This document shows, piece after piece, positions 3,903 through 58,838 of a DNA stretch of 64,000 nt. The notes under the pieces are model-generated. The model was not told where the DNA came from. It searched no databases and saw only the letters and a list, made by a program, of their open reading frames with translations. Within the stretch, counting starts at the first letter, position 1; each line of letters opens with the position of its first letter. The translations under genes and the position numbers were made by a program. The DNA lies in the NCBI GenBank assembly GCA_025201805.1, contig MU619258.1, forward strand, positions 62,001-126,000, written 5' to 3'. The stretch is from Parasitella parasitica NRRL 2501 (Eukaryota; Fungi; Mucoromycota).

Positions 3903-4346
3903 TTATATAGCTTTATCAGTAGCCTTGTATGTGTAATCCCAACCCTGTGTAGATGGTGTTTCTGTGGGGATCTTTGCTTGCTTGGGATATGTAATGTGTC
4001 GGCTTTTGACAAGAGCACCCTTATATAATCTCTCGCTGGTCTTTTCTAATTCTGTCATGGCTGCATTCATGACTCTAAATTGACGTTCAAGAGAACGTTC
4101 TCTTTGCTCTCTGCTACGCATTTTGTGAAGTTTCCAAGCACGTTCGATAGTTTCATGTTGTTCTAATGCTTCGCCTTCTAATTGAATCGGCTGTTCTCTA
4201 CGTGCAGGTTCAAATAATACACGTCGAATAACTTCAAGACGAGTATCACCTCCAGGAGCAGCTGATCCAGAGGTTGACGATAATCTGCTTTGTAAAAGTG
4301 AATAGGTGGCCCTCCTAGCGTTGTTCGAGCTGCGTACAATATTCAT
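3903..4346 (-). CDS. MRPL28: Mitochondrial large ribosomal subunit protein mL40 (yeast MRPL28-like)
   Basis: HETIERAWKL...LERQFRVMNAAMTELEK...YP....IPTETP...W motif. Arg/Ser-rich presequence begins at ATG 4346; the ORF-track extension upstream runs through a poly-T tract. Confidence 0.85.
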   Translation of the reverse strand: MNIVRSSNNARRATYSLLQSRLSSTSGSAAPGGDTRLEVIRRVLFEPARREQPIQLEGEALEQHETIERAWKLHKMRSREQRERSLERQFRVMNAAMTELEKTSERLYKGALVKSRHITYPKQAKIPTETPSTQGWDYTYKATDKAI

Positions 4347-36753: not shown

Positions 36754-38868
36754 GATGAAGAATTGGTTTCAGTTAGTTGATATAGCTTGCAAAAAGAAAA
36801 TCATCAACTGGAGTGTAACAAAAAGGATATGGTATTCCAGCGCGTTTATCTGGACGAGTGACGTCAAACGAGGTTTGCCTTAAACTGATCATATTGCGCT
36901 GTGAAGAGTGGGGAAATACATTCACTCTACTGCTGATTCTAGTCTGTTATCCTAGTATCATGCTGCGTTCCATCGAATGATTAAAACTTCCTACTTGGCG
37001 ATGCTGCATCAATCATTTCAAACTAAAAGAGGCACATCTTACAGAATTTTCTCTCCTGCAGGTGCATAAAATGTCTAGAACCTATTTTTGAAAATTTAAA
37101 TCATTTTTGAGGCATAATGTAATTTTTTCAAATTTGAAATAATGTGTCTTTATTCATTTTACCTTATGGACTCTCATGAAAAGTTGCTGTAAATCAATCA
37201 CCTATTCTTGTTGGATATGTGCTAGGTAAAAGAACAACAAACTGCGGCGTCATTTTAAGCACTCGATTCGACTAAAAATGGTATAATTTCGATAAATATC
37301 GTTCAAATCAAGTGCAAAATTGGTGGCGGTAATGCAGAGCTCACCTGGCAATCTATTTTATAATGTCTCCACAACGATGTATTTGGTGCACAGAGAACAA
37401 CTAGCGAAAATTGGGTATAGACAATCATTTAGATACGTAAGAATACATTTTCTTGCAAAATATAAACTACAGTATTGAAACATTGGACATTTCAGAAGTT
37501 TCGTCAAATTTATGTAATATACAATGTGCTGCATGCTAAATCCATTTCATGATGATCTTTCAGGGCAAAGTTTGTATGGTATATAGCCACAGAAATGTAT
37601 GATGGCATAATATATATATTTATGTGGATATATAGCAACAGTCCGGATTATTGTTTGCGTTTGCCTATAATCGAGAATTCGACATCATTAATTTTAAAAG
37701 GGAAATTTGTCTATTTCAATATATAAAAAGAATCTATAATGCCCATGAACATTTAATCTGCTGCTTTTCTATGGCATTTTTCAACCAGAGATAAATGGAA
37801 TTGCACAACATCGAATTATAGTGGTATGCCCAAGTATGTTACTCTGGCATTGCTCTAGTTTTAAATATCCTGGTATTCTGAATTGACGAATAATGACCAG
37901 AGAGCTCTAGACATTTTTAGCAAAGACTTTGCAATGTAAGGCTCGTAAGAAGCAAAAAGTTTTGGATACAGTGGAGTGTAAGCAGGAATCTGCCCTTCTC
38001 CACATGCGTAGCAATGAAAATGCTTGAAATACATGGTTATTTTTGGTTTCATTAGCTGGCTAAAGACAAAGACAGATATAAATCTATACCCATATTGAGA
38101 AAAGATCGAGATTCCATCATCATCAAAGAGATACGCTAAACGTTTCTTTGCAAATAAAAATGTTTTTTTCATGTGCTCATGAATACGATAACAAACGATC
38201 TCCTTGATTTCTCCTTAATACCACTATTTAGTATATTGTTAAAATTGGTTTTGCTACTCTCGGGATCCCCTCCGTTCATCAAACATGATGATCAATCTTG
38301 CTATATTTTTCTAATACTCCATGTGTCTACTACAGAAAGTTACATGATGAAAGCAAAAAACTGCATACATATCTTGTTGATAGTTACGGATTTATGTTTG
38401 TATATATTTTTACAACATTATTCATATGCTACATATGCTACAGATGTTCTTTACGAAAGCTTGAACACAAATAAAGCATATTTATTCATAAGGTTTCGTC
38501 CAACGATTTTGGCTTGAATTGTACGACACCAACAGCTGCGAAAAACGCCTCAAGTTGTACACAATAATTATAACTGGTACCTTTGAAAGTACAGCATGCA
38601 TATTTGCAGCGGTATAACAGTACCAAGAAAGCTCTTTCAACAGTACTGATTTTCATTCTTGTCAGGCTTCAAGGTCGATCAATCCATGGTGAATGATGAA
38701 GTTTCATTATCAGGATATCCATATGAAAGCACCTTAAACGTTACAACATTAAAAATATCCCGAGACCCTTTTTTTCGAGGAAATGCATTATATGAAACTG
38801 CAGTTGTCTTTACATATGCAAGAAGTTTTGTACAGTACATTTATACGCGTCTTGGACCACCCTAATGA

Positions 38869-38871
<3 letters not shown>

Positions 38872-38901
<30 letters not shown>
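38872..38901. repeat. (AT)n microsatellite
   Basis: About 15 AT units seen directly. Confidence 0.95.
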
Positions 38902-38904
<3 letters not shown>

Positions 38905-39424
38905 CGTGTCTATAGAACGGATACCAGTGCTTCGTTTCAAAAACATTAGAATGTCAAAGTTTCCCATGTATCAGCTTTACAGGATAGGAATCAAAGCTGG
39001 TGAAAGGGAGACCTTGCTCATAAAAGTCTAGTCCTTTCCCCTTGATTTTACTCACGGGCCTGCTTGAAATAGATTCTTTTACTGTTTATTTTGGTTGGCT
39101 TTTCACAGTTTGCATAAGTATTTATATGTTTGATTTATGACACTCACCGAATCTACTCAAGAAAAATGAGCAATAATAACCTCAAATCAGACAATTCCAC
39201 TTATCGGCGTAAGTTTATAAATGGCAAGTAACTGTAGCAATCTTTGCTTGTTGTCAAAAATACAAACAAGTTTCAAGATAAATAACTATTTGTGATACCA
39301 TTGTAGTACAAACACAGTGTTCCCAATGCATAAAAGTTCGAACGCCCATTTCGCCGTTATATAAATTGCTTAGAAACGTATCCCCTTTTATTTTCACATT
39401 TTGCTCATTTTTCAAATCATCTTT

Positions 39425-39479
39425 NNNNNNNNNNNNNNNNNNNNNNNNNNNNNNNNNNNNNNNNNNNNNNNNNNNNNNN
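39425..39479. other. Assembly gap (N run)
   Basis: 55 Ns just upstream of the giant gene. Confidence 1.
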
Positions 39480-39614
39480 TTAAAAAAAAATATCTATCAA
39501 AAGTTTCTGTATTTTTGCATTTTCTTGTTTTTAAACACACAAACACTACTTGTATCAAAAAAAAAAAAAATATCTCTTTTTAACCCTTTAATTTTGATTT
39601 GAAAAAAAAAAAAA

Positions 39615-42600
39615 ATGACATCTTTTCCAAAAGGTTGGTTTTTCATAAAAAACCAAAACAATGGATACGTTTTATCTATTGAAAAATCCACTGCTGGTGA
39701 ATCCATCGTGATTGCAACTATGAAAAGCAAAGATTTTGATTCTCAACTTTGGCAACACGGCGAGGATGATCGTCTCCACAACAAAAAGACTGGGTTTGTC
39801 CTTGACATCCGCAAAGGTAAGTTTAACAACGGCGCTTCAACTACTTTGTTTTACCCCTGGATCTGCCTGTGCTAATGTTTCACCTGTCAAAATGAACTAG
39901 GCCAAGCTAAAGCTGGGTCCGATGTTGTGCAGCAAAACGAATCCGACTCTTCTGAATGCCAGAAATTTGGCGTCTCATCTGATGGTCATATTTATCTGAA
40001 GAAGGATCAAAAGTTGGTTCTGGGCATCAAGGAGTCATTCTTTACTCGTCGTGAAGGTCAACATGTCCATCTTCAAAGTCTTGATAAGAATGTTAAGGAT
40101 AGCAAGGAACAGCGTTGGGATTTCTTTTCGCCCTCTCAGAAGCGCTCTGTTTCCGTCAATAACCCTATAGACAGCTTGAAGCGTACTATAAGCGGTGCCT
40201 CTCTTGGTAGTTTCAGTAGCTCGTCTACCAATACTCATGGTAAAGTGCAAGATAAACTGCACAGTTCCAACGCGTATTAATATTTGAAAGTAGATGATGA
40301 TGGCTGTCTAGACGACTCGCAACACAATCAACTGAGTAACTTCCCTGACACTGAATTCTTTATCAAGTCTGACGCCACTGGCTATTTTGTTGGCGTTGAT
40401 GCTGCTGCTGTGAATAGTCCAGGTGCTCGTCTTTCACTTGAGCCTCTTCGTAAAAACAACTATGAGAGCCAGCTCTGGCATTACGACGTTATTACTGGTC
40501 GTTTGATCAATAAAAATTCTGGCTTCACCCTAAGTGCCGAAGAGATCTCTGACGAATCTCTTGTATGTCAATCTTCAAGCACCAGCGAGAAAGATTTGCC
40601 TGGTCAGTCTTGGAATCTCTCCGGCTCTGGTGAAATCAAATTGAAGCATGAACAGCACAGCTTTGTTCTTGGCTACAAGAAGGATAGCTGGTTTGGGTTG
40701 AATCGCGAAGGTTCTCCTGTTTTACTTCAAAAGCAGACCGACGGAAAAACTCACTCCCACCAGCGTTTTGTTGTTGTTTTGCCTGTTTTCAAAAAGAAGA
40801 CGACCGAGATTGTCAATGTTACTGAACAACAAGGCGTCTTTCCTGAAGGCTACTTTTTCATCAAGAATCAAAAGCACGGCCTTGTCATCTCTGTGCTTGA
40901 AACTGACAAATTGGCTGCTGAAATCATTGCCTCCAACCTGGACACTCGCAACTTTAACCGTCAATTATGGAAGTTCAATGACGGCTTCCTCATAAACAAG
41001 GCATCCAACCTTGTCTTGGATGTCCGTGGAGGTAAATGCCACTATATAGACGCATTGGCAAGTGTTATATTGACACCTACTATTTTGTACAGGCTGCATT
41101 GAAAAGGGCTCTGAGCTTTGCCAATACAAGCAAAAGCAGGAAGGGTTTGAGAACCAACAATGGGGGCTTACTGTTGAGGGTTTCATCCACGCCAAAACTC
41201 ACAAGAACATGGTTCTGGCTATTTCCAACAGAAAGGACACTGATTCCAACGTCTTTTTGACAGATAAAAAGACGCCCGATCATGAAGAGCAGAGATGGAA
41301 CTTTGTACTGCCTGTGTTCAAGCAGAAGTCTAGTAAGTAGGAGCTGCACTAGTAGTATGTATAGCAACTCAACACATCCCACTCTAGCCACTACCACCGA
41401 GACTACCGTGAAGAAATCTGTCAGCTATCACCACTATGCGCAATACCCTAGCGGCTGGTTCTTTATCCGTTCCTTCGTTGGAGGCTCTTCTACCGATGCC
41501 CCTCTTGTTTTGACTGCAGAAAGCAACTCGTCTCACGTTGTTCTTTCCAAGATCAGCAAGCAGGATTGGCAATATCAGCTCTGGATGTACTGGAATGGCG
41601 TTTTGATCAACTTTGCTACTCAATTAGCCATCGATGTAGTCAATGACAGTAAGTTCTGCACCCCTTCCCTCATTCCCCTACCAAATGCCTTCTATAACAT
41701 TTAACACATTTTGCCAACTTGTATAGATATCAACGCTGGTTCTGCTATTAGCCAGGAAGTCCGCAAAGCTGGTGATGTTGGCCAAAGGTGGAGTTTAACA
41801 GTCGATGGCTATCTTGTTCATGGATCGAATCCTTCCTTGACACTTGTTCCCCAGGTTGCCGAAGAGAACACGTACAAGCTCTGCCTCGCAGACCATGCTT
41901 CATCTTCTCAGCAAGACAACCGCTGGGGTCTTTTGTCTCCTGAAGTCAAGATTGAGAACAACATGCAAGTTCTCGTTCGCTGGAGTGTAACTCTTTTGTC
42001 TGAATGGAAAAAATCCACTGAGCAGACGATCCAAAAAGTTGTTCATCGCATTGCTGACTGGCCGCAAGATACCTTCTTTATTAGCGCCCAGGATGGTTTA
42101 GCATTGGCGCCCGAGAAATCGGAAGCCTTTTCTTTCTTGGTTGTCAAAAAACTGGAACTTGGACAAAGCGAACACTTTAAATGGACTTTCCGCAATGGTT
42201 ATGTTGTGCATGTTGCCACAGGCCTAGTTTTGCATGCTTCAGGTAAATTCTGCACATTTTTATAGATTCAATGTTTATTGACATTTGCTTCCCTTATAGA
42301 TGACCTTGTTGGTGGCAGTCAGCTTCAAATTCGCGAAGAGCTCTTGGCCGACTCCAAAACCATTGACCAACGCCAGAAATGGGTCATCAAGACGGATGGT
42401 TCTATCGTCTCTGATCTCAAGACTAACCTTGGTTTTGCATTGATCCAACAAGCCAACCAGTATATGGTTCAACTTGCTTACACAAGCAACACAAGTGAAC
42501 ATTACAGCTGGGGCTTTGTCCGAGGACACTATGAGAACAGATACAGCCAGGTTTACAAGAAGGAAGTTAGCGTTGTAACTCGTACTGAACGTATTTTGTT

Positions 42601-45600
42601 GACTGTACGCACTCAGTGGGGTAAGTAGAGAAGGGATGCCCTGTACTTTATAAACGTTGTTGCTCACCATTTGCTGTATCCATAGCTGCATCCAACGCAA
42701 ACACCAAGTTGGTATCTCACTCTTACGGTGTCTTCCCCGAGAATTGGTTCTACATTCGCTCCAAGGAAGACAAGACGCTTGTTTTGACTGCTCCTAGCCG
42801 TAAAGAGGGTGCCAAGCTGACACTCTCCAAGCTCGATTTCAAGGTTTTCCGCCGTCAGTTATGGCATACGCAGGACAATGGCTGCCTTGTCAACTTGGAT
42901 TCTGATCTCGTCATTGACGTTGCAGGAGGAGCCTTTAATGTGGGCAGTGATATTATCCAGTGGCACGAGAAATACCTGCGCAGACACCGCAAGAATCAAC
43001 TCTGGGGTCTCTCTGTAGATGGGCATCTGCATCCCAAGTCTCGTCCTGGACTGGTTCTCGGAGCCAAGGGAAACAAGGCCTTTGATGGCGTTCAAATCCA
43101 ATTGCACGCCCGTGGTGCGTTGGATCTTAACTATCAACAATGGACATTCGCCACTCCAATCTTTGGCAGAACTATTTCTGGTGTAAAGGGAGTATCCGCT
43201 GCTGGCGTGTTGGAGCAGAACGATGATTCTGTCTTTATTGACAGCGTTGACGAAGCTTCATTTGAGACATCCACCACGGATCGCTACGAGCGCAAGACCA
43301 AGCTGACGGTTGTCCGTCGCTGGGGTCTGTTCCCGGAAGGAGGCTTCTTTATTCGTGCTGGCTATGGTGATGAGCATCTTGCACTCACTGTTGAAAAGAG
43401 ATCTCGCACTGGCGAAGATGGCGGTGTCGAGCATGAAGTGACATTGAGGCCCATCAATTTTAAAGAGTATCAGTGGCATTTCTGGGCTTATCAAGAGGGC
43501 CATCTTATCAATCTTCAGACCGGCTTTGCTTTAGATGCTCGCACCACCAAGGGTCTTTTGGTTGAGGATGGTCTTCGCAACCCACTTTTTGTCCGCGAAA
43601 AATCCATGTCGGAAACGCAGTTCTGGTCTCTCACTGCTGAGGGCGAGATTTTCTTGCGCTCTGACCAACACCTTGTCGTTGGTGTTTCCAACTCTCGCCG
43701 AGTATCTGTCTCTGGCGCTCAAGTAGGTGCTCGTGAACTGCGTGTACGCAAGTTCTTGAACGACCAGGGTCAACAAGAGACTTCCATCAAATCTGAAAAG
43801 TGGTTGAGATGGCTGTTCTCCAAACCCGTCTACCGCAAGACTACTACTTCTACGACAACCAGCACTACAACAACTTTGGTCACTGCAGAGTCTGCAAGCT
43901 CTACCGCCGCTGCGGGCGAAATTGTTGAAGGCTTTGAGGACCAAAAGCTAAGTGTCAAACAAAAGGAGGAATCTGCTGATGATTACACCACCGATGACGA
44001 CAGCGACAGCGACAGCAATGATTCTGACAGTGACAACGAAGTGGAGACAAGCAAAAAGCTTAATCTCATTGGCAACTTGGGCATCGCTACTGCAGGTGCT
44101 ACCATCTTGGCTGGAGCTGGTGGCATGATCACTGATGTGATTACCTCTGCCCCCCAAAGCATTTCGCCTGCCGTCGTGGGAAAGAAAATGAAGCAGGGAT
44201 CAGGCATCAAGCAATCTTTGGCTAAAAAGACATCTTACAAGTCTCTCAGGAACGAGCGCAAGGATTCCTTCCACGCCAGTGCTGATTATGTGCCCACTGG
44301 TTTTGAAAAGGTTGTTCGCTACAAGACACATCAGCAGCCCAACTTTCCAACTGCCGGTTACTTTATGATCAAGAGTCATCTCCATGGCTACGTATTTGAC
44401 ATTGCCAACGGTGAGGCCAAGGATGGTGCCTTTGTAGTGCTTTCCCCCATCAGATCAGTCGACTTTGCAAGCCAATTGTGGTCTTACAAAGATGGCCGTG
44501 TGTTCAATCTCAAGGGCCATAACCTTGTTTTGGACGCCTCTATGACTGATACCATTACAGCCGGCGAGAGACTGGTTATCTCGGTTCAGAAATCGTCTTT
44601 GGGATTGTCTGATCAATACTGGGAATTTGGCACTGAGGGCGGCTTGATTTGCTTAAAGTCTAAGCGCAATTTGGTGCTTGGTGTCAAGGAGCTCAACCGC
44701 GTTACAGATCAAAATGCGTCGGTCGATGTCTATCTTCAAGAAGAAAAGTCCCATCTCAAGAGCAACTTTGGTCGTCCTGAGCAACGTTGGGAAATCAAGG
44801 TTCCTGCTTTGATTCCTGTTGAGCAAACTACAAACACCACGTCTGAATCCAAATATACCATTATTGAGGGCGGTAAGATCAGTGCCATCTCCAGCTCGGT
44901 GTCTGCTATCATTGCATTCAAATGGTTAAAGGAAACCTTCCACCACAAGGTTACTGCCAACAACCAATGGCCCACCTCTCAAAACTGGTTCTTTATTCGT
45001 ATCGGTAATGAAAATGCCTTTTTGTCTTCCGGAAGCGCTGACTCTAGCGAGGTCAAATTTGTTTCTCTTGGTCAAAACGAGGATCACAAGCAATTCTTGT
45101 GGGTGTATGTCAATGGGTACTTGGTAAATTACAAGTACATGTTACGCCTTGTCTATGACAAGCAATGTAAGTGTGTTTTAGGGTGTAAAAATAGAAGGCG
45201 TATAAGTTAACCTATCCTAATTAGCCAACAAGCTTTTGCTTTCCAATGATACTAAAACTCTTGATCAAGCTTTCTGTGTCTCCAGCCAAGGCAACTTGTC
45301 TGTGAAGATCCAGTCTGAATCCACCTTCTTTACTGTTGCTTCTGCACACTCGGAGCACCATTCGTACGAACTTGTATCTTCGACTGTTGAAAACACGACT
45401 GAAGCTGAGCACTCGCTTCAATTGCACGTTCCTGTATTCTCTGACGTTGAGGTTGAAAAGGAATCCAAGATTGCTCTTTCTACAGTAACGTCTTGGATCG
45501 AGTCTTCTCGTAAGAACTCTTCCACTACCACCACCTCTACCACCACAACTACTACTACCAAGGTATCTCAGTTCTATGGTGTATTCCCTGCTGGCACCTG

Positions 45601-48600
45601 GTTCTTCATCAAGGCTCAATCCAAGGAGGGAGACAGCCTTGTCCTTGCTGTCAAGGACTCTTCTTCCAAATCTGGAGCATCCTTGATTTTAAAGAAGTTG
45701 AACTTTAAGGACTACCGTAGTCAATTGTGGACTTTCCGCAACGGTCTGCTAATCAACTATGGTAGCAAGCTTGTGATTGATGTGAATGGCGAGATTAACG
45801 AGTTCTCCAAATTGATTCAATCTGCTGAGGCAGGTGTTAGCACTCAAAAATGGTCTCTTACTTGCGATGGTTATATTCAATTGGACAGTTACTCTCAATA
45901 TACATTCGGCTATACTCAAGCTGACAAGATTGCTGAGGGCATCGAGGTCGCTCTTGTTGCAGCCAAGTCGTATGAGGAGTCATCCACTACCCAATCCATC
46001 GCTTGGAGATTCTCTGTGCCAGTCTTTGGCAAAACAGCAGCCTCTGCTGCATCCACCGCCATCACTACAACCACCACCACTACCACAATTACGACGACTA
46101 TCTCGTCTATCGAGAGAATTACTGCTTGTATTGAGCAAGGTGCTCTTATTGAGAGTGTCGAGGAAGCTGATATCAAGGTTGAGGACATTTCTGTAAAAAA
46201 GAACAATGCTGTCAACAATGCAACTTCTTCCGCAACCGCCGCTGTTGTCAAGGAAAAGCATCATGGATTCCAAGATGTCCTTACTAGTGTTGGTATTGCA
46301 GTTACTGCTGGTGTTGTAGCCGTTGGCGCTGTTGAAGGAGCCTCCAAGATTGCTGAAAAGATCTCTGAGCACAAAGAAGAGAAAAAGACTGAGCAAAAGA
46401 AGGCCGAATCTGCCTCTTCCGCTACTGCTGTCGTCAAGCAAGATCAAAAGCAAGAAGCTTCCTCCACCACCGCATCTGCTGTTACTGATAAAAACAAGGC
46501 CACTGAAACCATTGTTGTTCGTCGCTCTCAGCGTACATCGATTCAAATTATTGAGGAATCTCGTGTCATCATTCGTGCTTGGAAGATTGTCTTTAGCCAG
46601 CGTGTTCATCATTGCAAGACAAAGGAAGAGCTCGTCCAGACTATTGAGGAATCTCGCGAAGAGTTGTACAGACGCTTGGACGAACATCTGCGTGTGCATG
46701 CTTCCGTAGACCATCTGATTTCTGGTTCTGTTCCTGAATGGCATGTCTCTATTCAACAGGTCAAGGAACTGTACAGAGCTCGTGTTTTTGACAGATTCTT
46801 GGATCGTTTGAGCCACAAAGAGATTGCTGACGTTTCCAGTCTTGATTTTGACTCTGTCCTGTCATCTGCTACTCAGGAGGTCGAGAATCATTACAGTCTT
46901 GTCATTGAAAACCAAACCAAGGTCCTTTCCGAGTCAAGCAACTCCACTGTCCAAAAGACCCAACATTGCCAAGATGTATCCATCCAAGAAAATGTTCTTG
47001 TTACTATTGATACCATCAAGGTCACTGTTCGTTATTGGTTTATCGGCTTGTACGAAACTATTTCCGCTGCTAGAAACAAGGGCTCTTCTGAAGAGGAAAT
47101 CAAGGTTATCATTGAAAATTCTCGCAAGGAACTTTCCAATGAGCTGGCCAGTATCAAGACTTCTGCTACAAGTCATATCGAGAACTCTTCTTCCACTCTT
47201 TTGACTTCCAAGCAGACATCAATCAGCAACACCATCCAAACAGCCATATCTCAAACAGAGAGCATTGTAAACACTCAAATCAGCACTGTCTGTTCTGAGA
47301 AAAAGTACCTTCATACCGAGGAACATTGGTTGGATGTCACTCGTGTCACCGAAGAAACTCTTTCTGGTCAATTAAAGGTGTATCAAACTGCCATCACTCA
47401 GGAGATCTCAGAGGTTCAAAAGACTGAGATTGACAAGTCGGATCAGGCTGAAATTTCTGTTGTTTTGGATGAAAAAATGGTCGCTGTTGCTCAACAGACG
47501 GTTGCCAACAAGCTCACTGAAACCCAAATCAAGCTCTCCAGCTGGTACACTGAAGTTACGCAACAAATTTCTTGGCTTTTGGAAGAAAGCAAGACGTCTT
47601 CTTCTACTACTACTACTACGTCGTCTGAAGAGATTGTCAAGCAGGACGCACTGGCTATTGTTGACGCTGCTCAAGTCGAGATCAATACTCGTATCGAGGA
47701 GACCAAGCTTGTCGTTCGTGCTTACTATGCTCATTTGACCTACTTGAGCTGGGCTGAGCGCCGTCGCATTGAGTACGCTTTGGACAACATCAAGGCATCT
47801 CTGACTGCTAGCATCACTCAGTTCAAAAAGTCAATTGACAAGAGTCAGGTAACCAAGGAGGACATCGTTCGCTACTCTAGCTATTCGTTCGGTGCCACGG
47901 CTTCTCGCATTGTTATGACTGACTTGCAAACCATCGTTGTCAAGGTTACCAATGTCAAGGAAACCACAACTGTTGTGAATAAGTCTGATGAAATTCAAGC
48001 CGAAAAAACCAAGGTTGCTCTTGCTGAAACTGTCATCAAGGACAAGGTCACTGAAGTTACCAAGACGACTGCTGAACAGGTTGAGGTTGCCAAGTCAAGC
48101 AAAGACGAGGTTGCCAAGAAGACCGAATCTTCCAAGGTTGATCAAGTCAAGAAGGCTGAGAAAGTCAATATTGATCAGCAAACCAAGATTGTCGACAAGG
48201 TTGAATCTGAAGTGGAGCAAACCAAGGTCAGCAAGGTTGATAACAAGCAGGCTTCAAGCAGCGTCGCTGTTGTTGATAGCCAAAAATCATCTGAAAGTGG
48301 TCATGGTAAAGCGGCTGTTGTTTCAACTGCTGTTATTGGAGCTGCTGCCGCTGCTATAGCTGGTGCTGCCATTATGCATCATCATGAAGCAAAGGCTGAA
48401 TCTAAGACTGATGTTGCTGCCAAGGTACCTGTTGCTACCGCTCCTGTCATTGAGCAGCCAGCCAAGGATACTGTTGTTGTTGGTGGTGGTAACAAGTCTG
48501 AAGTAATTCATGTCGACAACCAAACCTCAGCTTCATCAACTACTGCTACCTCAGCTGTGACCAAGCAAGAAAAATCTGAGACTCTTATTGTTGTTTATGA

Positions 48601-51600
48601 TCAAGTGCAAGTCATTGTTCAAGAATGGATTACCACATTGAATAAGCGTGTGTATGAATGTGCTCAAAAGAAGACGAGCACTACTCAACAAGAGATTGAT
48701 ACTATCGTTTATGAATCGCAACAGCAGCTTATCCTGGAAATTGAAAAGGCCAAGCGCAACACAACAGCTGTAATCGGCACATCTCAAACGTCCTTCCACG
48801 ACACTCTGTCTTGGGTTAGAAGCACTGTCTGGAAACAAGCTGTTGAAGTCAAACACATTGGTTATGAAATTGCTTCATCTACTGAAACCAGCACTACTCA
48901 TTTCGAAGAGAAGCTGGAGACATTGAAACAGACTACCTTGCAAAAGGTAGATGTAGAGATTCAAAAATCAAAGAAATCTGCTTCTGTTATTCATGTCGTT
49001 GGCCATGAACACGCTGCCGTCATTGCTGCTGGTAAGAAGTTTGAAGGTGTCGACTACTCCAAGTCATCTTGTGGTGGGTCTATCGAGAAGACAAAGGTTA
49101 CTGTCGGTATCCTCATCGAAGATACTCGTGTCACTGTCCAGCGACTTTTGAGAGACCTCACCTTCTCCATCACTGAACGCCGTAAGCAGGGTGGCGAGAA
49201 CGTGCAAGCTGACATTGATGTCATTGTCAAGACGCATCGCGAGGAGATTAGTGCTTACATTCTCAAATCCAAGACTGAATTTGAGCAAAGAATCACTTGT
49301 GTTCACCAATCTGCAAGCACTACTGCTTCTACCGCCGCCGACACCACCACCACCACGGCTACTGAAGCATCATCTTCTAGTGTTGATGTCGAAATAACCA
49401 ACGAGACCATCAAGAAGGTGCACTCAACCTTGGAGCAAATCCAAGAGAGTGTTTTTGTTCAAGTAACCAAAGTGGAGCAAGTGACTACATCGACAACTAT
49501 TACATCTGAAGTAGAGTATGATGAAAAGTTGACTACCATCACCCACGAAGCTTGCCAAAAGCTGGATGCTACATTGGCTGTGTCAGAGACGGTTATTGGC
49601 CATCATATTGAGGTGATTGCTGAATCGTCAGCTACCAAGCAGCAACAATCGTCAAGCAGCACTACTGACAAGACCGAGACAAAGGAGTCTAACAGTGTTT
49701 CTTTGGGTGTCGAGTATGGCCTTCTTGTTGTTTCTGAAACAACCAAGAAAGTGTCTAGTCAAATCTCTGCTCTGATCGAACAAGTACACCACCGTATTAC
49801 TGTAGGATCAGAGTCTCTTGAAACCGATATTCATGGCTACGCAACCAATTCTGACAAGGAACTGGATCTCATCTTTGAGGAGGCCAAGTCAAAGATTTCT
49901 TATGAGCTGTCCATGGTTGCATCGCACGAAAAGGTAGAAGAGGAGCATTTTATTGAATACCTTGAATCTATCCGTACATCGGCAAAGACGCGTATCAGTC
50001 AAATCCAAACTGTGGCCACTGATCACAAGGAGGAATCCAAGACTGTGTCCGAGAAGCTTCTTCAAATTGCAGAGGAATCTCGTCATGAGGTTACTGCTCA
50101 TTACGAATCTGTCAAGCAATCTGTAACCAAAAAGACTGAAAAAGCATCTCAAGTCGTGCATGGATCAGTTGGTCATGAAAGCTCTGCTGCTACTCAAGTT
50201 GTTGTGTCTCATACTGAGGAGCAAAAGAAACAACAAGAGCAAAAGAAGCAAGAGGAGCACAAGTCTTCTACTGATCTCGCCAAAAAGGTGCTCGTTGGTT
50301 CTGCCGCTGTTGCTGCAGGCACCGCCATTGCTGTTGAGGTAGCCAAGAAGCTGAACGAGCACAAGGAAAAGACGGAAAAGATTGAGCACACCGAGAAAGA
50401 AACCGCTGTTGTAGTGGAAGACGTCAAGGTTCAATTCAACAAGTGGATCTCTACACTCACTGAAACTGTCGTTACTCAGTCCAAGCAATCGCAAGTCTCA
50501 ACTGAGGAGATCTCCATTACCATTGAGAAATCCAAGGCCGAGTTCCTCGAGGTCATCAAGAAGGCAAAGTCCAGCCAAGTGATTACCGAAAAGCACCAAC
50601 ATGAGGTCTTGACTTGGATAGAAGAAACCGCTGTTGCTCAAGCATCTCGTATTCAAGAGATTGCTGTGCACTCATCCACCTCTTCTGCCATTGATATTGA
50701 ATCAAAGCTTCAAGTCATCAAGATCTCCACCAGTCAAGAAGTTGACATTGCTTTGGAAAAGTGCAAGAGCACCAAGTCTGCCGTGTCTGGGTATGTTGGT
50801 GTCACTGTCGAGCAGTTGAAGCAGAAGGAGGCTGCCCTGTTGGATATTCGCAGCGAGCTCGTAATTGTCGTTCAAGATGCCCGATCATCTTTGGTCACCT
50901 TCTTTGAAAAGTTTAGTAAATCCGTCGTCTCTCGTCTTGAGCAAGGCGGTGATAACATTGAGAAGGACCTTGCCATCTTGATTGCCAACACTCGCAAGGA
51001 GCTGTCGGTTTACGTCGAGAGTGTCAAGTCAACTGCTACCAAGCGATTGTCTGCTCTGGAAACCAAATCCTCCACTACTGTCATCTCCACTGCCGCTCTT
51101 TCCGGCATTGCTACTGCTGAAATCATTGCCGTCCTAAAGTCTAGTGAACAGCTGCTCGAGCAAAAGATTAACCGCGTGCATTCTAGTGTTTGGTACTTGG
51201 AGAAGAACCAGGACGTGACCAAGATTGTGGAGACCATCACCTCGATTCAGACTGAAACTACTGTCGAGATTACTGAAAAGGTGGAGAGCTCTCATTATGG
51301 ATTTGTCACTGCTATCAATGATCACCACAAATCAGGCCATGTCTCTACTGATGTCAGCAAGCACACGACCACTCAAACAGAGCAGCACGAAGCTGCACTC
51401 AAGACATCACTGTCTGTTCAGGAAGTCAAGATCACTATTCGCGAGTGGCTGCGTACTCTTGCTGAAAAGGTCTCTGTTTGTTCTCAAAAGGGCGGCTCTT
51501 CCGAAGAGATTGACGTTATTATCAAGAAAGAAAATGAAATCATTTTCGAATATCTTGATCAATCTGTCACCAAGATAACTGAATCTGTAAAGGCTGAGGA

Positions 51601-54600
51601 GAGCATCAAGTATCTCCACACCACTGTGCAGCAAGTCAAATCTACCATTACAAAGACCAGCGCTGAAATCATGGTTATTGGTGTTGAAGCTGCTACTTCT
51701 ACGTCTCACTCTTACGGTGGTTTTGACAAGATGACTTCGGTCATCACTCAGCACGAGCATCAGATTAGTGAAGCTCTTGTTGTATACGAGTCCAATGTTT
51801 CAAAGCAAACAGTCGAAAGCACCAAACAACAACAACAAAGCACATCCAACAACACCGCCGCTGTTGTCACCAAGAAGGATACCTATACCGTCGTAGCTGT
51901 CGAGTATATCCTGACCACTGTCAATACGTGGATGGAAGAGCTTATGGTTGAAGTTTCTGAATGTGCCAAGGTCGAGCACAATGTTCAAATTGCTACCAAG
52001 ATGATCAACAGCATCGTTGCGGAATACAGAGAGTATATTAACACTGAATTCTCAATGATATCTGAAAGGGTTCAAAGCTCCAAGGCTGATGCTACTGCCA
52101 AGCAAGAGTTGATCAACATTCTTGAATGGACTCGTGGTGTCATTCTCCAAAGCTCTACTCAAGTCCAAGCTATTGGCATCAACTGTGCTAGCTCTTTCAG
52201 TGCTACTGGCGGTATTGAGCAGATGAAGCCTCTTGTCAATGCTTCTTGGGACCAAGTCAAACTGACCGTTGGTCGCTGCAACAAGACGATCAAGATTGGC
52301 GTTGAGCGTTCTTCTGCACACTCTGAAAAGAAGAAAGTGGTAAGTGTTGTTTACATTCTACATGTATGTCGTCGTTGATGACTAACAACTTTTTTTTGCT
52401 CTTTGCAGAAATCTGAATGTCAAAAGCAGGAGATCAAGAAGAAGGCTGAATGCATTGCTGCCGAAAAGAAGAAGAAGGAAGAAGCTTGTGCAAAGAAGAA
52501 CAGTAAGGCCAAGCGCACTGATTCTGGTTCTGATTCTTCGGAAACTGATTCTGGCTCTGATACCGAGGACGATTGTGACAAGAACAAGAACAAGAACAAG
52601 AAGAAGGAAAAGAAGGAGAAGAGCAAGTCCAAGGCAGACTGTAGTAAAAAGGCCAAAAAGTCGACTACAGGCAAGAAATCACAAAAGTCTCCTGATTCTG
52701 ACAGCAGCGACAGTTCTGCATCTGACAGCGACGATAGCGCCAACAAGAAGGGCAAGAAATCCTCCCTTGACAAAAAGAAGATTGCCGTTGGCATTATTGC
52801 TGGCGGTGCTACTGCTGGTGCCATCATCAAAGCAAAGCACGATGATTCAGAATCTGACTCTGACTCTGACTCTGACTCTCACTCTGACTCTGACTCTGAT
52901 AGCAGCAAAAAGGCTACCACTGTCATTGACAAGAAAAAGCTTACCACCGGTGAATCTACCCTGGATGTCACTGTCATTGTCCGCGAATGGTACGAAAAAC
53001 TCATAGTTGAGGTGTCTTCTCGTTCCAAGAAGGGCGGATCCAGTGCCAGTGCTGATATTGAAGTCATTGTTCAAAAGGCTACCAAGAGCATCTCTGAAAC
53101 CCTTCGCATCATCAGCGCCAATGCGCACAAGTCTGTTAGCGACAAGACCACTGTAACACAGTACCAAGCTTCCATTGAGTGGGCCAAGAATCTCGTCATT
53201 CAAAGCACCTACACCATCAAGGCTATTGGTATCAACACTGCTGCTTCGGCCTCGTCCAAGACTGGTGGCATTGAGCAAATGCGCCCCATTGCTGTCTCTA
53301 TTCAGGAGCAAGTCAACGTTGAAATACGTCGTTATAAGCTTGTCGTTCAAAAGACTGAGGAGGTTCAAAAGAAGGAAAACACTGCAGTCTCTGTTATCGA
53401 GCACAAGGAAAACAGCGAAAAGATATGCACGGGTCGCCAGTCTGCTGTCAATCGCAAGGATTACTGTGAGAAGCTCGAAAAGCACGTCTCTGAGGTTGTC
53501 GCTGAATCCAAGGTTGTCATTGTGTCCTGGTTTGCACAGCTTATTCGTGAGGTATCTATTCGTGTCCATCAAGGCGGCTCCAACATTGACCAAGATGTTG
53601 CTGCATTGATTGAGAAATCCAAGCTTGAGCTTACAAGCACTATTGAGCGTACCAAGAACAAATTCACTGCTTCAATCGAAGTCTATGAAAAGGACAAGAC
53701 CTTTGCATTGGTCGAATATCACATTCAGGAGAGCCTCAAGACTGTTCAAGCTACTGTTGATTCCAAGATTGTGCAGGTTCAAGAGATTGTCACCAAGCAT
53801 CATTCTGAATCTGAGGTTACTGAGAAGCTTTCTGTTGTTCTGGAATCTTCCAAGCTCAACATCACTGAAACTCTGGAGGCTACCCATACTCAATCTGTCA
53901 CTGTGATCAAGCAGGAAACAACGCAAACGGAATCCACTGTCAAGATTATCGACACTGTTGATACTGTCAAGACAGCCGTGGCTCACTGGCACGCCAAGCT
54001 GACAGAGGAGATTTATGCTATCAGCATTGACACCACAATCACAAACAAGGAACAGAAGATTTCTACGTTAATTGAAGAAGCTACTGTGGAAATTCAACGT
54101 GTTACTGTAGAGGCCAAGTCAAAGGTAACCCAAGATTGCAGTTCTGTCAAGAAAATCAGCAAGACCAAGGAGCAGGAGCTTTTGGCCACTATTGACTATG
54201 TGCATGAGACCTTCTCTACTGATGTCCAAAAGATTCAGCAAGTGAGTGTCGAGGCCGTCAACAAGTCTGAGACCACCAACATCAAGGAAACCATCTCTGC
54301 TGCCATCCATGCCTCCCATGAAAAGATTGACACTGCTTTGACTCGCACCACTGCCACTGTCATTGGTGTTGCTACTGCGGCCATTGGTGCTCATGCTGTT
54401 AGCAAGCAAGAAAAGAAGCAGGAAGGAAGCAAATCTTCCCATGCTGGGCTTTCTGTGGATGTCGACGAAAATGTCACTGTAATTTCAAAATGGTTTGAGC
54501 TGTTTACCAAGAGAGTGTCTGGATCTGTGCTCCACGGTGAAGGTGATGTGGTTCAGAACGTCACTGCTGTTACAGAGCATGCGGAACAAGAAATCACCGA

Positions 54601-57600
54601 GATCATTTCCACTGCTCGCAACGACTTTGTCAAGCGCTTAACGCTTCAAAACTTGGATCAAGAGTCTTACAACTATGCTTGCAAGCACTATGAGGAAAGC
54701 CTCGAGTCTGTCCGTGTCTCTATTGTTACTGAAATTGTCGAGGTCAAGAAGGTTGCAATCCATGCCCACACTAGTGGCAATGTGCACGAGTTGGAAACCA
54801 AATTGACCAAGCTGACTGAAACTTCCAATGAGCGCATCAAGGTTGTTATGGGCTCTTCTGTAGTCATTAGCCACAAGGATCAGTCTGGCAGCGCAAGCTC
54901 CTCGTCTGGCAAGAAGGCTGAAGCTGTTGTCCAGATCGAAGTCAAGGATTCTGACGTTGTTGTTGGTAAGCAAGATATTGACTTTGGCCGTAAGGAATCA
55001 AGCGTTACTGTTACTCATGAACAAGAAAAGACCAAGAAGTCTGAAAAGGGTATGTGCAAACTAGCACAAACACTGTCTCATGACACTGAAATACTAACTT
55101 TTTTTTTTGACATGTAGCTGAAGAAAAGAAAAAGGACTCCAACATTGACAAGATTGTAGCTGGAACGTTAGCCATCGGTGCTGCTGCAGGTGCTGCCGTT
55201 CTGATTCATAAAAAGAACGAAAAGGAGGAGGCTGCTGCTGCTGAAAAGCTCAAGAAGCAGCAGGAAACCCATGCCGTTCAAAACCTTAGATATGACTCTG
55301 GCATCGCCACGATTGAAAGCGTCAACATCTCCATCTCTACTTGGTTTACTTGTTTAATCCAAAAGGTGTCTTCTGCTTCCAGAGCCGGCGCCTCGTCCAA
55401 GAAGATTACGACAATTGTTGAAGAGTCAAGAACTGAGCTCACCCAAATCATTGAACACGCCAAGGTAACTGGTTCCAAGTACTGTGCATCTGCCAGCGAT
55501 GAGCAACAACTCGTCAGCAAGATTGAATGGGCTTCGTCCGTTGCCCACAACCAAGCTGTTCAAATTCAACAAATTGGCATCAACGCATCCGGTGGCAAGG
55601 CTGACATGACCGGCCAAATGCAAGCCTTGGCTACTGCATCTTATCATCAAATTGAGGTTACTCTTGAGCAGCTCAAGACGTCTGTTACCTTCCATCAAAA
55701 GATAAACAAGATCAACAATACCAAGACACATACTACTACTGGTTCCAGTGAAAAGGCCTCTGCTGTCGAGAAGCCTGTTTGTGGAAAGATGGAAACATCT
55801 GTGGACAAGACCAAGGTTGCCTACACTGTCATTCAAGAGACCCGCACTACCACGATGGCCTTGTTTGTATCTCTTTCTGAGCGTATTGTCACTCGCATTC
55901 GCCAAGGTGGATCCAACGTTCAAGAGGACGTCAACAAGATGATTGCATCGAGTGAGCAAGAGATATCCAAGATCTTTGCCCAGGCCAAGTCGACCTCTTC
56001 GACCTCGTCGTCGTCATCGTCGTCTTCATCCAAGATTGACAAGAAGACTCGCATTGAAATCGAGGAAGCTCTTGCGTCTGTCCACAAGACTGTGCAAGAA
56101 GAAATCACTCAAGTCAAGGTTGTTACTACCGAGGTTGTTTCCTCCGAGACTACCGACACTAAGATTGCTGTTGACAAGGTGCTGCAAGTGAGCAAGGCTT
56201 CGCAGAGCAAGATTGAAACTACTTTTACAAGTGTTTCTGAAGGCATTGCTGCAAGTCGTAAGTCCTACAAAGCAGCAGCTGATCGTATTTTTGTGCTAAT
56301 CTCTATTTTTTTTTTCATCTAGTTATCATCGTTTCCCAAACTGCTCAACAAGCAACCGAGACTGTCCAAGGCTGGTTCTCTGATCTCAAGAACAAGATTG
56401 ATAAGCTTCTCGAGGCCAGCGACTGCTCTGAAGAGGAAACTCAGCAAAAGATCAACGTAATTGTTGCCGAAGCTGAAGCAGAGATGAAGACAAAGATCGA
56501 GAAGCTTCAGCAAACGACCACTACAACTACGACATCTACCAAAAAGACCTCTTCTACCACTCAAGTTACAACTGACCACCATCTCGACATCTTCTTTGGT
56601 AACATCAAGTCCTCTGTCCAGAGTCAATTGGATGTTGTCAAGACCGCTGTCCAAGACACTAGCAAGACTGACAAGTCCAAGATTATGTCTGCTATTGAAA
56701 CCAGCGAGAACAAGTTGAAGCAGGAGGTCGAAAACCACTACCAAGCTGTTGAAAGCATCACTACGGTCGAGCACATTACTGGCTCAAAGCAGCAAGTTGC
56801 TACTCAAGTAGAAGGGCAAGATCGCCATGACTCTTACAAGGACACCATTGTTAAAACTGCTGTTGGATCTGCTGCAGTCGCCGCAGCTGCTGCTATCGCC
56901 ATTGATTACCACAAAAAGAGCCAACAGGCTGAAACGACTGCGGTTCAAGTAGTCAAACAGTCTTCTATTCAGGACGTTCAAGTACAAATTGATACCTGGT
57001 TTACTAGCCTGTCTCAAAAGATCACTGCATGCACCAAGAAGGGAGGTAGCAATGTATCTGTCCAAGTTGAAAACATTGTCAAGGAGGCCCAAGCTGAACT
57101 TGAGGTTACTATCAACGAGGCCAAATCTCAACACACCACTACCGAGACTTATACTTCCGAGTCCAGCCGCACGTTCACCAGTACTCTTGAATGGATCAAG
57201 GTCACTGCCTATAGTCAATCTTCCCAGATCACCCAGATCGTCAGCCAAAGCTCTTCAAGCTCCATTGATTTGACCACACAGATCGAGAACCATGTGTCTG
57301 CTACCAAGCAACAGGTTGATTCTGCACTGGAGGTCCATTACAAGAAGGCTACAAGCACTGTTGTCGCTATTGATCAATCAAAGAAAACACAGATTGTTGG
57401 CCAAAAGAAACAAGACACTGCGGTCGAAAACGTTGTGCAAGTTGTCAAGGAGTCTCGCCAGCAAACTCAAAAGCGTTTCAGCCTCGAAACCACTGTGATT
57501 GTTCAGGAAAGCAAGACTCACATCACCAACTGGCTTGTTCTTTTGTTGGAAAATGTAACCAGCATCATTCATGGAAACTCTGAAACCATTCGCAAGGACA

Positions 57601-58838
57601 TCTTTGCTAGACTCGATGTGGCCGAAAAGGACTTGGATGTCTTTATCAAGCAAACCAAGGACAAGTTCTTGCTCACCAGCAAGACTTCTGCCACTAGCCA
57701 TGTTGAGACAGAAACGCAAACCCTGATCGTCAACTCTGTGAAGCAGACCTTGGATTGCATTGACAGTATCAAAGCTACACTCCTTGTTCAGATCGCTGTT
57801 CTTCGCGAGGTCATCAACCGCATTGAAGTTGAAGACATCGATGTCATTACCACGAGACTTGAAGCAGTTATCACCCGCACGCAAAAGCGTGTTCATCACA
57901 CTCTTGAAATTGGCGTTGATCTGGCCATCTCCTCTGCCTTTGAAGGAAAGGTTGTCACCTGGTCTGAAACCTGTCATGTCCCTGCATCATTCAAGGATGT
58001 TCGCGTGATTGCATTTGATGTACTGGGCACAGTTGCAAACTTCCGCAAGAACCTTCATCAAGTCTGGAAGCAGATCATTACTCCCAAGAACGACGTTGTT
58101 CTCTCTGGATTAGACTTTAACGTCTTTGTCCGGGAATGGTACGGCGCTTACATTGAAATCAAGAGAGAAAACTTTGTCAAGCAGCGCCCTGTTTCTGACG
58201 ATATTACTCTTCACGAGTCGCTTGTTCATAGTCTGAAGCGCTATTACCTCAAGGATTCTCTTTCCGAAGCAGAAGCGGAGCAATTGTGTGCTGCCTGGAG
58301 AAGTATTGGCGTATACGACGATGCTTCCATCGGAATCCGTCGCCTCAAGAACCAAGCCAGTGCCAAGTACGCTACTATCGCCATCTCTGATACTTTGTCT
58401 ACTCGTTCCTTGATCGACCTGGCTCAAAGCAATTGTCTCTGCTGGCATGGTCAGTTTACTGCGGAAATGTTTGCATCTCAAACCGCTTCTGGTGCTACTG
58501 CATCTCAGTCTGTCATCAAGGGCACTATCGAATTGCTTGGCCTCGAACGTGCTAGTCAATTGGCTGTTGTTTCATCAAGCACTGAACTCGTAGCTGCTGC
58601 AAAGAAGGAAGGCTGCCATACTGTCTTGGTTGAGCGCGAGGAATGTTATGCTAGCTCTGCTCAAAAGGAAGCTGTGTCTGTTACTGACGTCGATATCAAG
58701 GTCGATGGCTTGGATGTCTTTGGAGAGAGTGTTCAATCTTTCTTGGAGCATGAATCTATGGTTCAAGTCTGGAATGAAAAGGGCGCTCCCTCTGCTCCCC
58801 GTGTCCTTGTTCAACAATTGAAAGGATCTTTTGATTAA
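39615..58838 (+). CDS. Giant protein (about 6,170 aa), probable Gellin: 10 ricin-B-like beta-trefoils + about 19 helical repeats + degenerate HAD-like domain. Exons: 39615-39816, 39901-40239, 40294-41031, 41093-41332, 41388-41648, 41727-42242, 42300-42620, 42686-45166, 45225-52339, 52409-55049, 55118-56257, 56323-58838
   Basis: All 11 introns are GT-AG with matching phases; exon sum is 18510 nt = 6170 codons. Ten units start with (F/W/Y)P.x.(W/Y/F)FFI(K/R) and contain QLW/QxW motifs. No signal peptide. Ten beta-trefoil domains in a very large Mucoromycota protein is the described Gellin architecture; A versus B is not resolved. Confidence 0.85.
52853..52900 (+). repeat. (TCTGAC)n hexamer repeat encoding SDSDSD in a Lys/Ser/Asp-rich linker
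   Basis: About 8 copies seen directly. Confidence 0.9.

What the first reader, a model, noticed from the sequence alone, without database searches (positions are those of the whole stretch)
39615..58838. A single 19-kb gene encodes a ~6,170-aa ten-beta-trefoil giant, probably a Gellin wound-sealing protein
Seen: a dozen separate ORF-track pieces splice in phase into one CDS with no signal peptide. Ten beta-trefoil units begin near 39620, 40340, 40840, 41445, 42060, 42730, 43330, 44345, 44970 and 45580. Established (from recall): aseptate Mucoromycota lack Woronin bodies and plug hyphal wounds by protoplasmic gelation using Gellins, which carry ten related beta-trefoil domains. Inference: this gene is a Gellin orthologue. 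The family is therefore probably described, but automated annotation would likely split it or call it a CBM13 lectin.
Basis: partly seen in the sequence, partly recalled or inferred. Interest (0 to 1): 0.85.

Follow-up and report, generated by a model that had tools for sequence, protein, structure and literature searches.

The report
Giant Gellin-family wound-sealing gene, paralogue B

Summary
The plus strand at 39615-58838 carries one gene of 12 exons and 11 short GT..AG introns, encoding 6,169 aa. My model is identical over its full length to the public entry [quoted passage not shown]. A single 18,441-nt intron-less contig from a public run is spliced exactly at introns 1-8. After them come 17 copies of a ~125-aa four-helix repeat, punctuated by Ala/Gly-rich hydrophobic segments, and a haloacid-dehalogenase-like C-terminal domain. 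The same architecture recurs in giant proteins across Mucorales. Domain 1 matches PDB 6LCI "mdaA-1", a Mucor domain that I recall as the Gellin domain structure of Nguyen et al. 2021 but could not verify. The match is only about 55% identical. A second gene in this genome, on contig C56, is 93-97% identical to 6LCI. A tree shows two old paralogue clades, and the window gene belongs to the clade without the solved domain, probably Gellin B. The public annotation here did not split the gene; it simply left it unnamed. The wound-gelation function is inferred by homology. The finding is correct but describes a known family, so interest is low to moderate.

The parts
39615..58838 (+). Whole CDS: 12 exons, 6,169 codons plus stop. 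Exons: 39615-39816, 39901-40239, 40294-41031, 41093-41332, 41388-41648, 41727-42242, 42300-42620, 42686-45166, 45225-52339, 52409-55049, 55118-56257, 56323-58838
   Evidence: 100% identical to P0134
39817..45224 (+). Span holding introns 1-8: 39817-39900, 40240-40293, 41032-41092, 41333-41387, 41649-41726, 42243-42299, 42621-42685, 45167-45224. All are phase 1. Five of them (1, 3, 5, 6, 8) sit at the same position of a trefoil unit (GD1, 3, 4, 5, 9).
   Evidence: All eight are skipped in one spliced contig; phases and flanking residues
52340..56322 (+). Span holding introns 9-11: 52340-52408 (phase 0), 55050-55117 (phase 1), 56258-56322 (phase 1)
39758..45400 (+). Part of the locus seen directly in the 18,441-nt spliced contig of run X1. 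The contig begins at 39758 after adapter letters. By its length it runs on to about 58889.
   Evidence: tables 5, 7 and 8
39615..40193 (+). Trefoil unit GD1 (aa 1-165; spans intron 1)
   Evidence: PDB 6LCI E 6e-19 and 1.6e-23
40335..40838 (+). GD2 (aa 195-362)
40833..41425 (+). GD3 (aa 361-519; spans introns 3 and 4)
41435..41992 (+). GD4 (aa 523-682; spans intron 5)
42053..42610 (+). GD5 (aa 703-869; spans intron 6)
   Evidence: leave-one-out E 3e-12
42724..43212 (+). GD6 (aa 886-1048)
43321..43881 (+). GD7 (aa 1085-1271)
43882..44337 (+). GD7-GD8 linker: Thr/Ser run, acidic Asp/Ser run and the first Ala/Gly-rich hydrophobic segment (aa 1333-1351 = 44065-44121). The paralogue has the same segment at the same place.
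44338..44850 (+). GD8 (aa 1424-1594)
44962..45490 (+). GD9 (aa 1632-1788; spans intron 8; the most divergent unit)
   Evidence: leave-one-out E 1.4e-8
45575..46078 (+). GD10 (aa 1817-1984)
47018..57911 (+). Rod: 17 clear copies of a ~125-aa repeat (aa 2298-5861). One copy is modelled as an up-down four-helix bundle.
   Evidence: AlphaFold2 pLDDT 94, pTM 0.86; only generic four-helix matches in PDB
46277..56903 (+). Span holding further Ala/Gly-rich hydrophobic segments of about 19-24 aa, at 46277-46333, 48317-48373, 50279-50344, 52778-52834, 55153-55209 and 56847-56903
   Evidence: similar positions in orthologues and segments of the same kind in the A-clade paralogue
52409..52915 (+). Lys/Ser/Asp-rich low-complexity stretch (aa ~4072-4240)
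57969..58835 (+). C-terminal haloacid-dehalogenase-like (HAD) domain, aa 5881-6169. The nucleophile motif FDVLGT is kept. Several other catalytic positions differ from those of cis-epoxysuccinate hydrolase.
   Evidence: PDB 8WBP E 9e-12 and (S)-2-haloacid dehalogenase 8WBR E 2.5e-4; weak Pfam PF00702; conserved in relatives and in the C56 paralogue

Best explanation
The locus is a single, transcribed, 12-exon gene of Parasitella parasitica (Mucorales). It encodes a 6,169-aa cytoplasmic protein of the Gellin family, in the paralogue clade ('B') that is sister to the clade holding Mucor MdaA, the protein of PDB 6LCI.

Shown here: the gene model, its splicing, the ten-trefoil array, and the rod, hydrophobic-segment and HAD-like architecture with its conservation across Mucorales.

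Inferred by homology with the published Gellin mechanism: the protein sits in the protoplasm, possibly held on endomembranes by its Ala/Gly-rich hydrophobic segments. When a hypha is torn, the outflow shear unfolds the weakly stable trefoil domains. Exposed sticky surfaces then aggregate the giant molecules and trap organelles, which gels the protoplasm and stops the bleeding.
For: One gene:
- The spliced model is 100% identical to public protein P0134.
- One 18,441-nt contig lacks introns 1-8.

Ten related trefoils:
- Pfam Ricin_B_lectin scores above its gathering threshold in exons 3 and 8.
- The profile and leave-one-out tests find ten units.
- Every unit has a one-to-one best match with the same-numbered unit of the C56 paralogue and of Hesseltinella.

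Family:
- Among 1.84 billion representative proteins, the strong colinear hits are giant Mucorales proteins of 3,700-6,400 aa.
- Nearly all relatives have 10 units, then rod repeats, then a HAD-like end.

Link to the characterised protein:
- Domain 1 aligns with PDB 6LCI mdaA-1.
- 6LCI is aa 1-196 of a Mucor protein about 97% identical to Mucor ambiguus P0153.

Paralogy:
- The C56 gene is 93-97% identical to 6LCI.
- The tree has two clades, each with 100% SH-aLRT support and each roughly following the species tree.

Published function:
- Gellins unfold and aggregate under shear, and trapping of organelles gels the cytoplasm (PMC10873517).
- Gellins occur in Mucorales and were not found in Glomeromycotina (PMC12712441).

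No signal peptide.
Against: - The primary paper (Nguyen et al. 2021, Curr Biol 31:271) could not be read. That 6LCI/mdaA is a Gellin, that Gellins have ten domains, and the A/B naming all rest on recall.
- No functional data exist for this protein or this species.
- The window gene is only about 55% identical to the solved domain and is the paralogue, so its role could differ.
- Run X1 is only guessed to be RNA. The missing introns argue for RNA, but the 3' third of the transcript was not inspected.
Confidence: 0.82

Rival explanations
1. It is a Gellin-family paralogue that has taken on another main role, for example a constitutive membrane-anchored cytoplasmic scaffold or organelle tether. 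Wound gelation would then be carried mainly by the MdaA-type gene on contig C56.
For: The duplication is old and both copies are kept in many genera. The central regions of the two paralogues have diverged strongly: the rod-repeat profile built from the window protein finds almost nothing in clade A. The conserved hydrophobic segments and the four-helix rod would suit a tether.
Against: Both paralogues keep the same ten units one-to-one, the same linker hydrophobic segment and the same HAD-like end. By my recall, the published phenotype involved loss of Gellin function generally.
Confidence: 0.12
2. It is a giant carbohydrate-binding (CBM13 / ricin-B) lectin, as some automatic annotations say, acting on glycans at the wall or on a host or partner. 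Parasitella is a mycoparasite of other Mucorales.
For: There are Pfam Ricin_B_lectin and RicinB_lectin_2 hits. Relatives are labelled 'carbohydrate-binding module family 13 protein'. QxW motifs are kept in the units.
Against: There is no signal peptide. The family is present with the same architecture in non-parasitic Mucorales. The closest solved structure is the Mucor mdaA-1 domain and not a lectin: E 1e-17 to 1e-23 against 1e-4 or worse for plant lectins.
Confidence: 0.04
3. The locus holds several adjacent genes that a model has joined wrongly.
For: The 19-kb size is unusual. Relatives are often annotated in pieces.
Against: There is one uninterrupted spliced reading frame and one 18.4-kb spliced contig. 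Full-length colinear orthologues of 5,800-6,400 aa exist in many genera.
Confidence: 0.02

Closest known systems
Gellin proteins of Mucorales (Nguyen et al. 2021, Curr Biol 31:271), represented here by Mucor MdaA domain 1, PDB 6LCI
   Same: Giant cytoplasmic protein. Ten related beta-trefoil domains at the N-terminus. Mucorales origin. Domain 1 is homologous and colinear with the solved domain.
   Different: It belongs to the sister paralogue clade, about 55% identical in domain 1 against 93-97% for the C56 gene. Nothing is known of its own function.
Ricin-B lectin / CBM13 beta-trefoil domains (Pfam PF00652, PF14200)
   Same: Same fold family, with three QxW-type subrepeats per unit.
   Different: There are ten units in one cytoplasmic chain, no signal peptide, and a characteristic FPxGWFFIK start to each unit. 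Sugar binding has not been shown.
HAD-superfamily 2-haloacid dehalogenase / cis-epoxysuccinate hydrolase (PDB 8WBP, 8WBR)
   Same: The C-terminal 290 aa align over the whole enzyme, and the nucleophile motif FDVxGT is kept.
   Different: It is fused to the end of a 5,900-aa structural protein. In the alignment, positions matching the enzyme's Asn, Lys and His...Asp are replaced, so activity is doubtful.
Chains of helical bundles in force-bearing or lipid-binding proteins (vinculin tail, FAT domain, apolipoprotein E N-terminal domain)
   Same: The rod repeat is modelled with high confidence as an up-down four-helix bundle of similar size.
   Different: There is no significant structural or sequence match (best Foldseek E 0.24). 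The resemblance is in topology only.
Woronin body / Hex1 plugging in Pezizomycotina
   Same: Same physiological task: stopping loss of cytoplasm after hyphal wounding (PMC10873517, PMC10023807).
   Different: It is an unrelated protein with a different mechanism: an organelle plugs a septal pore, whereas Gellins gel the bulk protoplasm of aseptate hyphae.

Membership tests
Gellin family | Ten related beta-trefoil (Gellin) domains in one chain | tested here: met
   Exactly 10 units in aa 1-1985. The same count is found in nearly all Mucorales relatives. The units correspond one-to-one across paralogues.
Gellin family | Sequence homology to a characterised Gellin domain | tested here: met
   PDB 6LCI mdaA-1 matches exon 1 at E 6e-19, exon 2 at 1.6e-23 and exon 8 at 3.8e-17. 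That 6LCI is the Gellin domain of the 2021 paper is my recall, not a tool result.
Gellin family | Occurs in Mucoromycota (Mucorales) | tested here: met
   The protein is identical to a Parasitella parasitica entry. All strong colinear hits are from Mucorales.
Gellin family | Cytoplasmic, with no secretion signal | tested here: met
   There is no hydrophobic N-terminus; the chain starts directly with the trefoil motif. This was a hydropathy test only.
Gellin family | Orthology to the MdaA-type (solved-domain) Gellin | tested here: not met
   The window gene lies in the sister clade. The MdaA orthologue is G000:C56, about 51060-71800.
Gellin family | Low-force unfolding of the domains, aggregation under flow, and bleeding phenotype on loss | not testable with these tools
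   These need single-molecule mechanics and genetics.
Ricin-B lectin / CBM13 | Match to the Pfam profile above its gathering score | tested here: met
   PF00652 scores 62.7 bits in exon 8 and 31.4 in exon 3 (cutoff 29). PF14200 scores 38.4 and 33.6 bits (cutoff 25.6).
Ricin-B lectin / CBM13 | Carbohydrate binding | not tested
   No assay was possible. Binding residues were not analysed.
HAD superfamily (2-haloacid dehalogenase-like) | Homology across the whole domain with the nucleophile Asp motif | tested here: met
   8WBP at E 9e-12 over aa 18-261 of the 300-aa query, with FDVLGT aligned to FDVQGT.
HAD superfamily (2-haloacid dehalogenase-like) | Full set of catalytic residues | tested here: inconclusive
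   Several aligned positions differ. The single-sequence AlphaFold model was poor, pLDDT 46.

The most novel reading that the evidence does not exclude
Two readings go beyond the known Gellin picture and are not excluded.

(1) The 70% of the protein behind the trefoils may be a conserved second working part: about 17 four-helix bundles in series, periodic Ala/Gly-rich membrane-seeking segments, and a degenerate HAD domain. The segments could anchor the molecule on organelles, and the bundles could open under force. That would explain how organelles are trapped in the gel.

(2) Gellin-type trefoil arrays are not confined to Mucoromycota. Giant proteins with 7-10 such units occur in the rhizomycelial chytrids Nowakowskiella and Cladochytrium. 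Gelation-type wound sealing may therefore be older, or may track aseptate filamentous growth.
Probability: 0.3. Interest if true: 0.55.

Novelty: new member of a known kind. Interest (0 to 1): 0.3.

Why it matters
It gives an unnamed 6,169-aa "hypothetical protein" of Parasitella a family assignment and a testable function. It shows that this genome, like most Mucorales, keeps two ancient Gellin paralogues. It also documents the full architecture: ten positionally fixed trefoils, a four-helix rod, hydrophobic segments and a HAD-like end. That architecture could guide experiments on how a protein gel seals aseptate hyphae. It does not open a new question, because the family and its role were published in 2021.

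Tried and rejected
- Reading the primary Gellin paper failed. The DOI and the PubMed id are not held. Searches for Gellin, Gellin A/B, mdaA and 6LCI gave only two short review passages.
- The AlphaFold model of the C-terminal 470 aa from a single sequence was too poor to use (pLDDT 46), so it was not sent to a fold search.
- The Foldseek search of the rod-repeat model gave no significant match (best E 0.24).
- I considered that only clade-B Gellins carry the Ala/Gly-rich hydrophobic segments, because two clade-A models lack them. I rejected this: the Parasitella, Mucor and Rhizopus clade-A proteins have them too.
- I looked for positional orthology between the chytrid or Mortierella trefoil arrays and GD1-GD10. 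None is visible.
- The search of earlier findings by words found nothing.
- The joined 6,169-aa translation was never sent to a database search tool. Searches were made exon by exon by reference, or with public protein ids. The joined form was built only inside local scripts, for length, composition, local profiles and comparison with fetched proteins.
- Read laying was given 5,901 letters.
Full report
**Gene model**

On the + strand between 39603 and 58835, long open-frame pieces follow each other in changing frames. Each boundary carries a short intron with a GTAAGT-like donor and a YAG acceptor.

Joining them gives 12 exons, 11 introns of 54-84 nt and an 18,510-nt CDS of 6,169 codons plus a stop. 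The ATG at 39615 lies 12 nt after an in-frame stop. G+C rises from 0.33 to about 0.45 exactly across the locus.

I built the model before seeing any annotation. It then proved 100% identical over all 6,169 residues to the NCBI entry [quoted passage not shown] (P0134). So the window comes from Parasitella parasitica, a mucoralean mycoparasite, and the public annotation already has this gene as one unnamed protein.

**Transcript**

One public run holds the stretch. Laid on 39500-45400, it gives a single 18,441-nt contig:

- It starts at 39758, just after sequencing-adapter letters.
- It matches without a single difference.
- It skips exactly introns 1-8 (84, 54, 61, 55, 78, 57, 65 and 58 nt, all GT..AG).

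An intron-less contig must derive from RNA. Its length fits a transcript ending about 51 nt past the stop codon if introns 9-11 are also removed. They are supported by the identical public model and by ungapped or nearly ungapped orthologue alignments across the junctions.

**Ten trefoils**

- Pfam gives Ricin_B_lectin and RicinB_lectin_2 in exons 1-4, 6 and 8, above the curated cutoff in exons 3 and 8.
- The translation shows ten units, each opening with a motif like FPxGWFFIK and each carrying three QxW-like motifs.
- A profile of the ten finds ten copies and no eleventh.
- In a leave-one-out test, each unit is recovered by the other nine at E from 1e-8 to 1e-37.
- The N-terminus has no signal-peptide-like hydrophobic stretch.
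- All eight introns in the trefoil region are phase 1. Five of them (introns 1, 3, 5, 6 and 8) interrupt GD1, GD3, GD4, GD5 and GD9 at the same place, right after the "VLDVxxG" strand. This is a footprint of tandem duplication of an intron-bearing unit.

**The rest of the protein**

Pfam finds nothing convincing in exons 9-12.

- Rod: local iterative profiles find 17 clear copies of a ~125-aa repeat between aa 2298 and 5861. With the 17 copies as its alignment, AlphaFold2 models one copy as an up-down four-helix bundle (pLDDT 94, pTM 0.86). Foldseek finds only generic four-helix bundles (apolipoprotein E, vinculin tail, FAT domain; best E 0.24).
- Hydrophobic segments: seven or eight Ala/Gly-rich segments of about 20 aa punctuate the chain. 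The first lies in the GD7-GD8 linker.
- C-terminus: the last 290 aa are homologous to 2-haloacid-dehalogenase-type HAD enzymes. The hits are cis-epoxysuccinate hydrolase 8WBP at E 9e-12 and (S)-2-haloacid dehalogenase at 2.5e-4. The nucleophile motif is kept, but several other aligned catalytic positions are changed.

These three points agree with earlier first-reader notes on the same window.

**Relatives**

Exon 8 (826 aa) was searched against 1.84 billion representative proteins. It gave 127 hits, of which 22 had E below 1e-30. The top hits are colinear giants of up to 6,419 aa, and all of them come from Mucorales.

Two further searches with full-length relatives listed about 45 named proteins. 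Their labels are "hypothetical", "Ricin B lectin domain-containing" or "carbohydrate-binding module family 13 protein". Many are partial.

Nearly all Mucorales members have 10 units in the first ~1,900-2,000 aa, then 13-29 rod repeats and a HAD-like end.

**Link to the characterised protein, and paralogy**

The only strong PDB match is 6LCI "mdaA-1". It aligns colinearly with exon 1 (chain residues 11-77, E 6e-19) and exon 2 (chain residues 81-182, E 1.6e-23), at about 55% identity. This also confirms the position of intron 1. 6LCI corresponds to aa 1-196 of a protein about 97% identical to a Mucor ambiguus entry.

The window's own genome (32.8 Mb) holds a second such gene on contig C56, at about 51060-71800:

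- It is colinear through all ten units and the HAD-like end.
- Its domain 1 is 93-97% identical to 6LCI.
- It is annotated as a partial 2,920-aa protein (P0155) and is interrupted by three runs of N.

A maximum-likelihood tree of the first 1,300 aa of 43 proteins shows two clades, each with 100% SH-aLRT support:

- Clade A holds the C56 gene, Mucor ambiguus, Mucor bainieri and Rhizopus delemar RO3G_10607.
- Clade B holds the window gene, RO3G_13835, Gilbertella, Choanephora and Mucor mucedo.
- Both copies are present in Parasitella, Rhizopus, Gilbertella, Choanephora, Pilobolus and Sporodiniella.
- Mortierellomycotina proteins form the outgroup.

Each of the ten units finds its same-numbered partner in the paralogue and in the early-branching Hesseltinella. 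So the ten-unit array was fixed before the duplication.

**What it is, and how sure**

The held reviews say that shear from the outflow unfolds Gellin proteins, which aggregate and trap organelles so that the cytoplasm gels (PMC10873517). They also say that Gellins occur in Mucorales and were not found in Glomeromycotina (PMC12712441).

Three points are my recall of Nguyen et al. 2021, which is not held here:

- that Gellins "contain ten related beta-trefoil Gellin domains";
- that 6LCI is the Gellin domain structure;
- that there are Gellins A and B.

With that caveat, the window gene is a Gellin-family member, most likely the Gellin B-type paralogue, and its wound-gelation role is inferred by homology. 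Rival readings (a diverged role for this paralogue, a lectin, or several genes) are given with their odds in the report sections.

**Novelty**

The family is known, and the gene is already in the databases, though unnamed. Three points may or may not already be in the paper:

- the A/B clade structure;
- the intron-phase pattern;
- the four-helix rod, with the conserved hydrophobic segments and HAD-like end in both paralogues.

One side observation could matter. GD-type arrays also occur in giant proteins of the rhizomycelial chytrids Nowakowskiella (10 units in 1,950 aa) and Cladochytrium (at least 7 units in a 4,921-aa protein), but without visible unit-by-unit orthology.

The joined protein was not sent to any search tool; database searches were made exon by exon by reference. 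Read laying received 5,901 letters.

Noticed in passing
G000:C56:51060-71800 (loci L007, L009, L008): This is a second giant Gellin-type gene in the same genome and the true orthologue of Mucor MdaA (PDB 6LCI). It is annotated only as a partial 2,920-aa protein (P0155). Three runs of N (61460-63083, 65117-67801, 68888-70342) break its repetitive middle. Most clade-A models in other genomes are likewise 'partial'.
   Followed up: partly
Proteins P0018 (Nowakowskiella sp. JEL0078, partial, 2,073 aa) and P0027 (Cladochytrium replicatum, 4,921 aa): Polycentric, rhizomycelial chytrids encode giant proteins with 10 and at least 7 Gellin-type trefoil units starting at residue 1. In Cladochytrium these are followed by about 3,300 aa of Val/Glu/Thr-rich sequence. 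There is no HAD-like end, and the units show no one-to-one orthology to GD1-GD10. The family may not be confined to Mucoromycota.
   Followed up: partly
Proteins P0001 (RCI07331.1, 'Rhizopus stolonifer') and P0128 (Gilbertella persicaria): The 'R. stolonifer' clade-B protein is 98% identical to the Gilbertella one and sits beside it in the tree. The R. stolonifer clade-A protein groups with Rhizopus and Sporodiniella as expected. The 25.6-kb R. stolonifer contig therefore looks like a contaminant or a mislabelled sequence.
   Followed up: no
window 39817-45224: All eight introns of the trefoil region are phase 1. Five of them sit at the homologous position of GD1, GD3, GD4, GD5 and GD9, which suggests the array grew by duplication of an intron-containing unit.
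   Followed up: yes
Proteins P0134 and P0135 (both labelled Parasitella parasitica): The two public Parasitella entries for this gene are only about 88% identical over 4,100 aa. This is a large difference for two strains of one species.
   Followed up: no
window 36200-39614: About 3.4 kb of AT-rich sequence (G+C 0.33-0.36) without long ORFs separates the gene from the nearest upstream long ORFs, which lie on the minus strand at 33866-36197.
   Followed up: no
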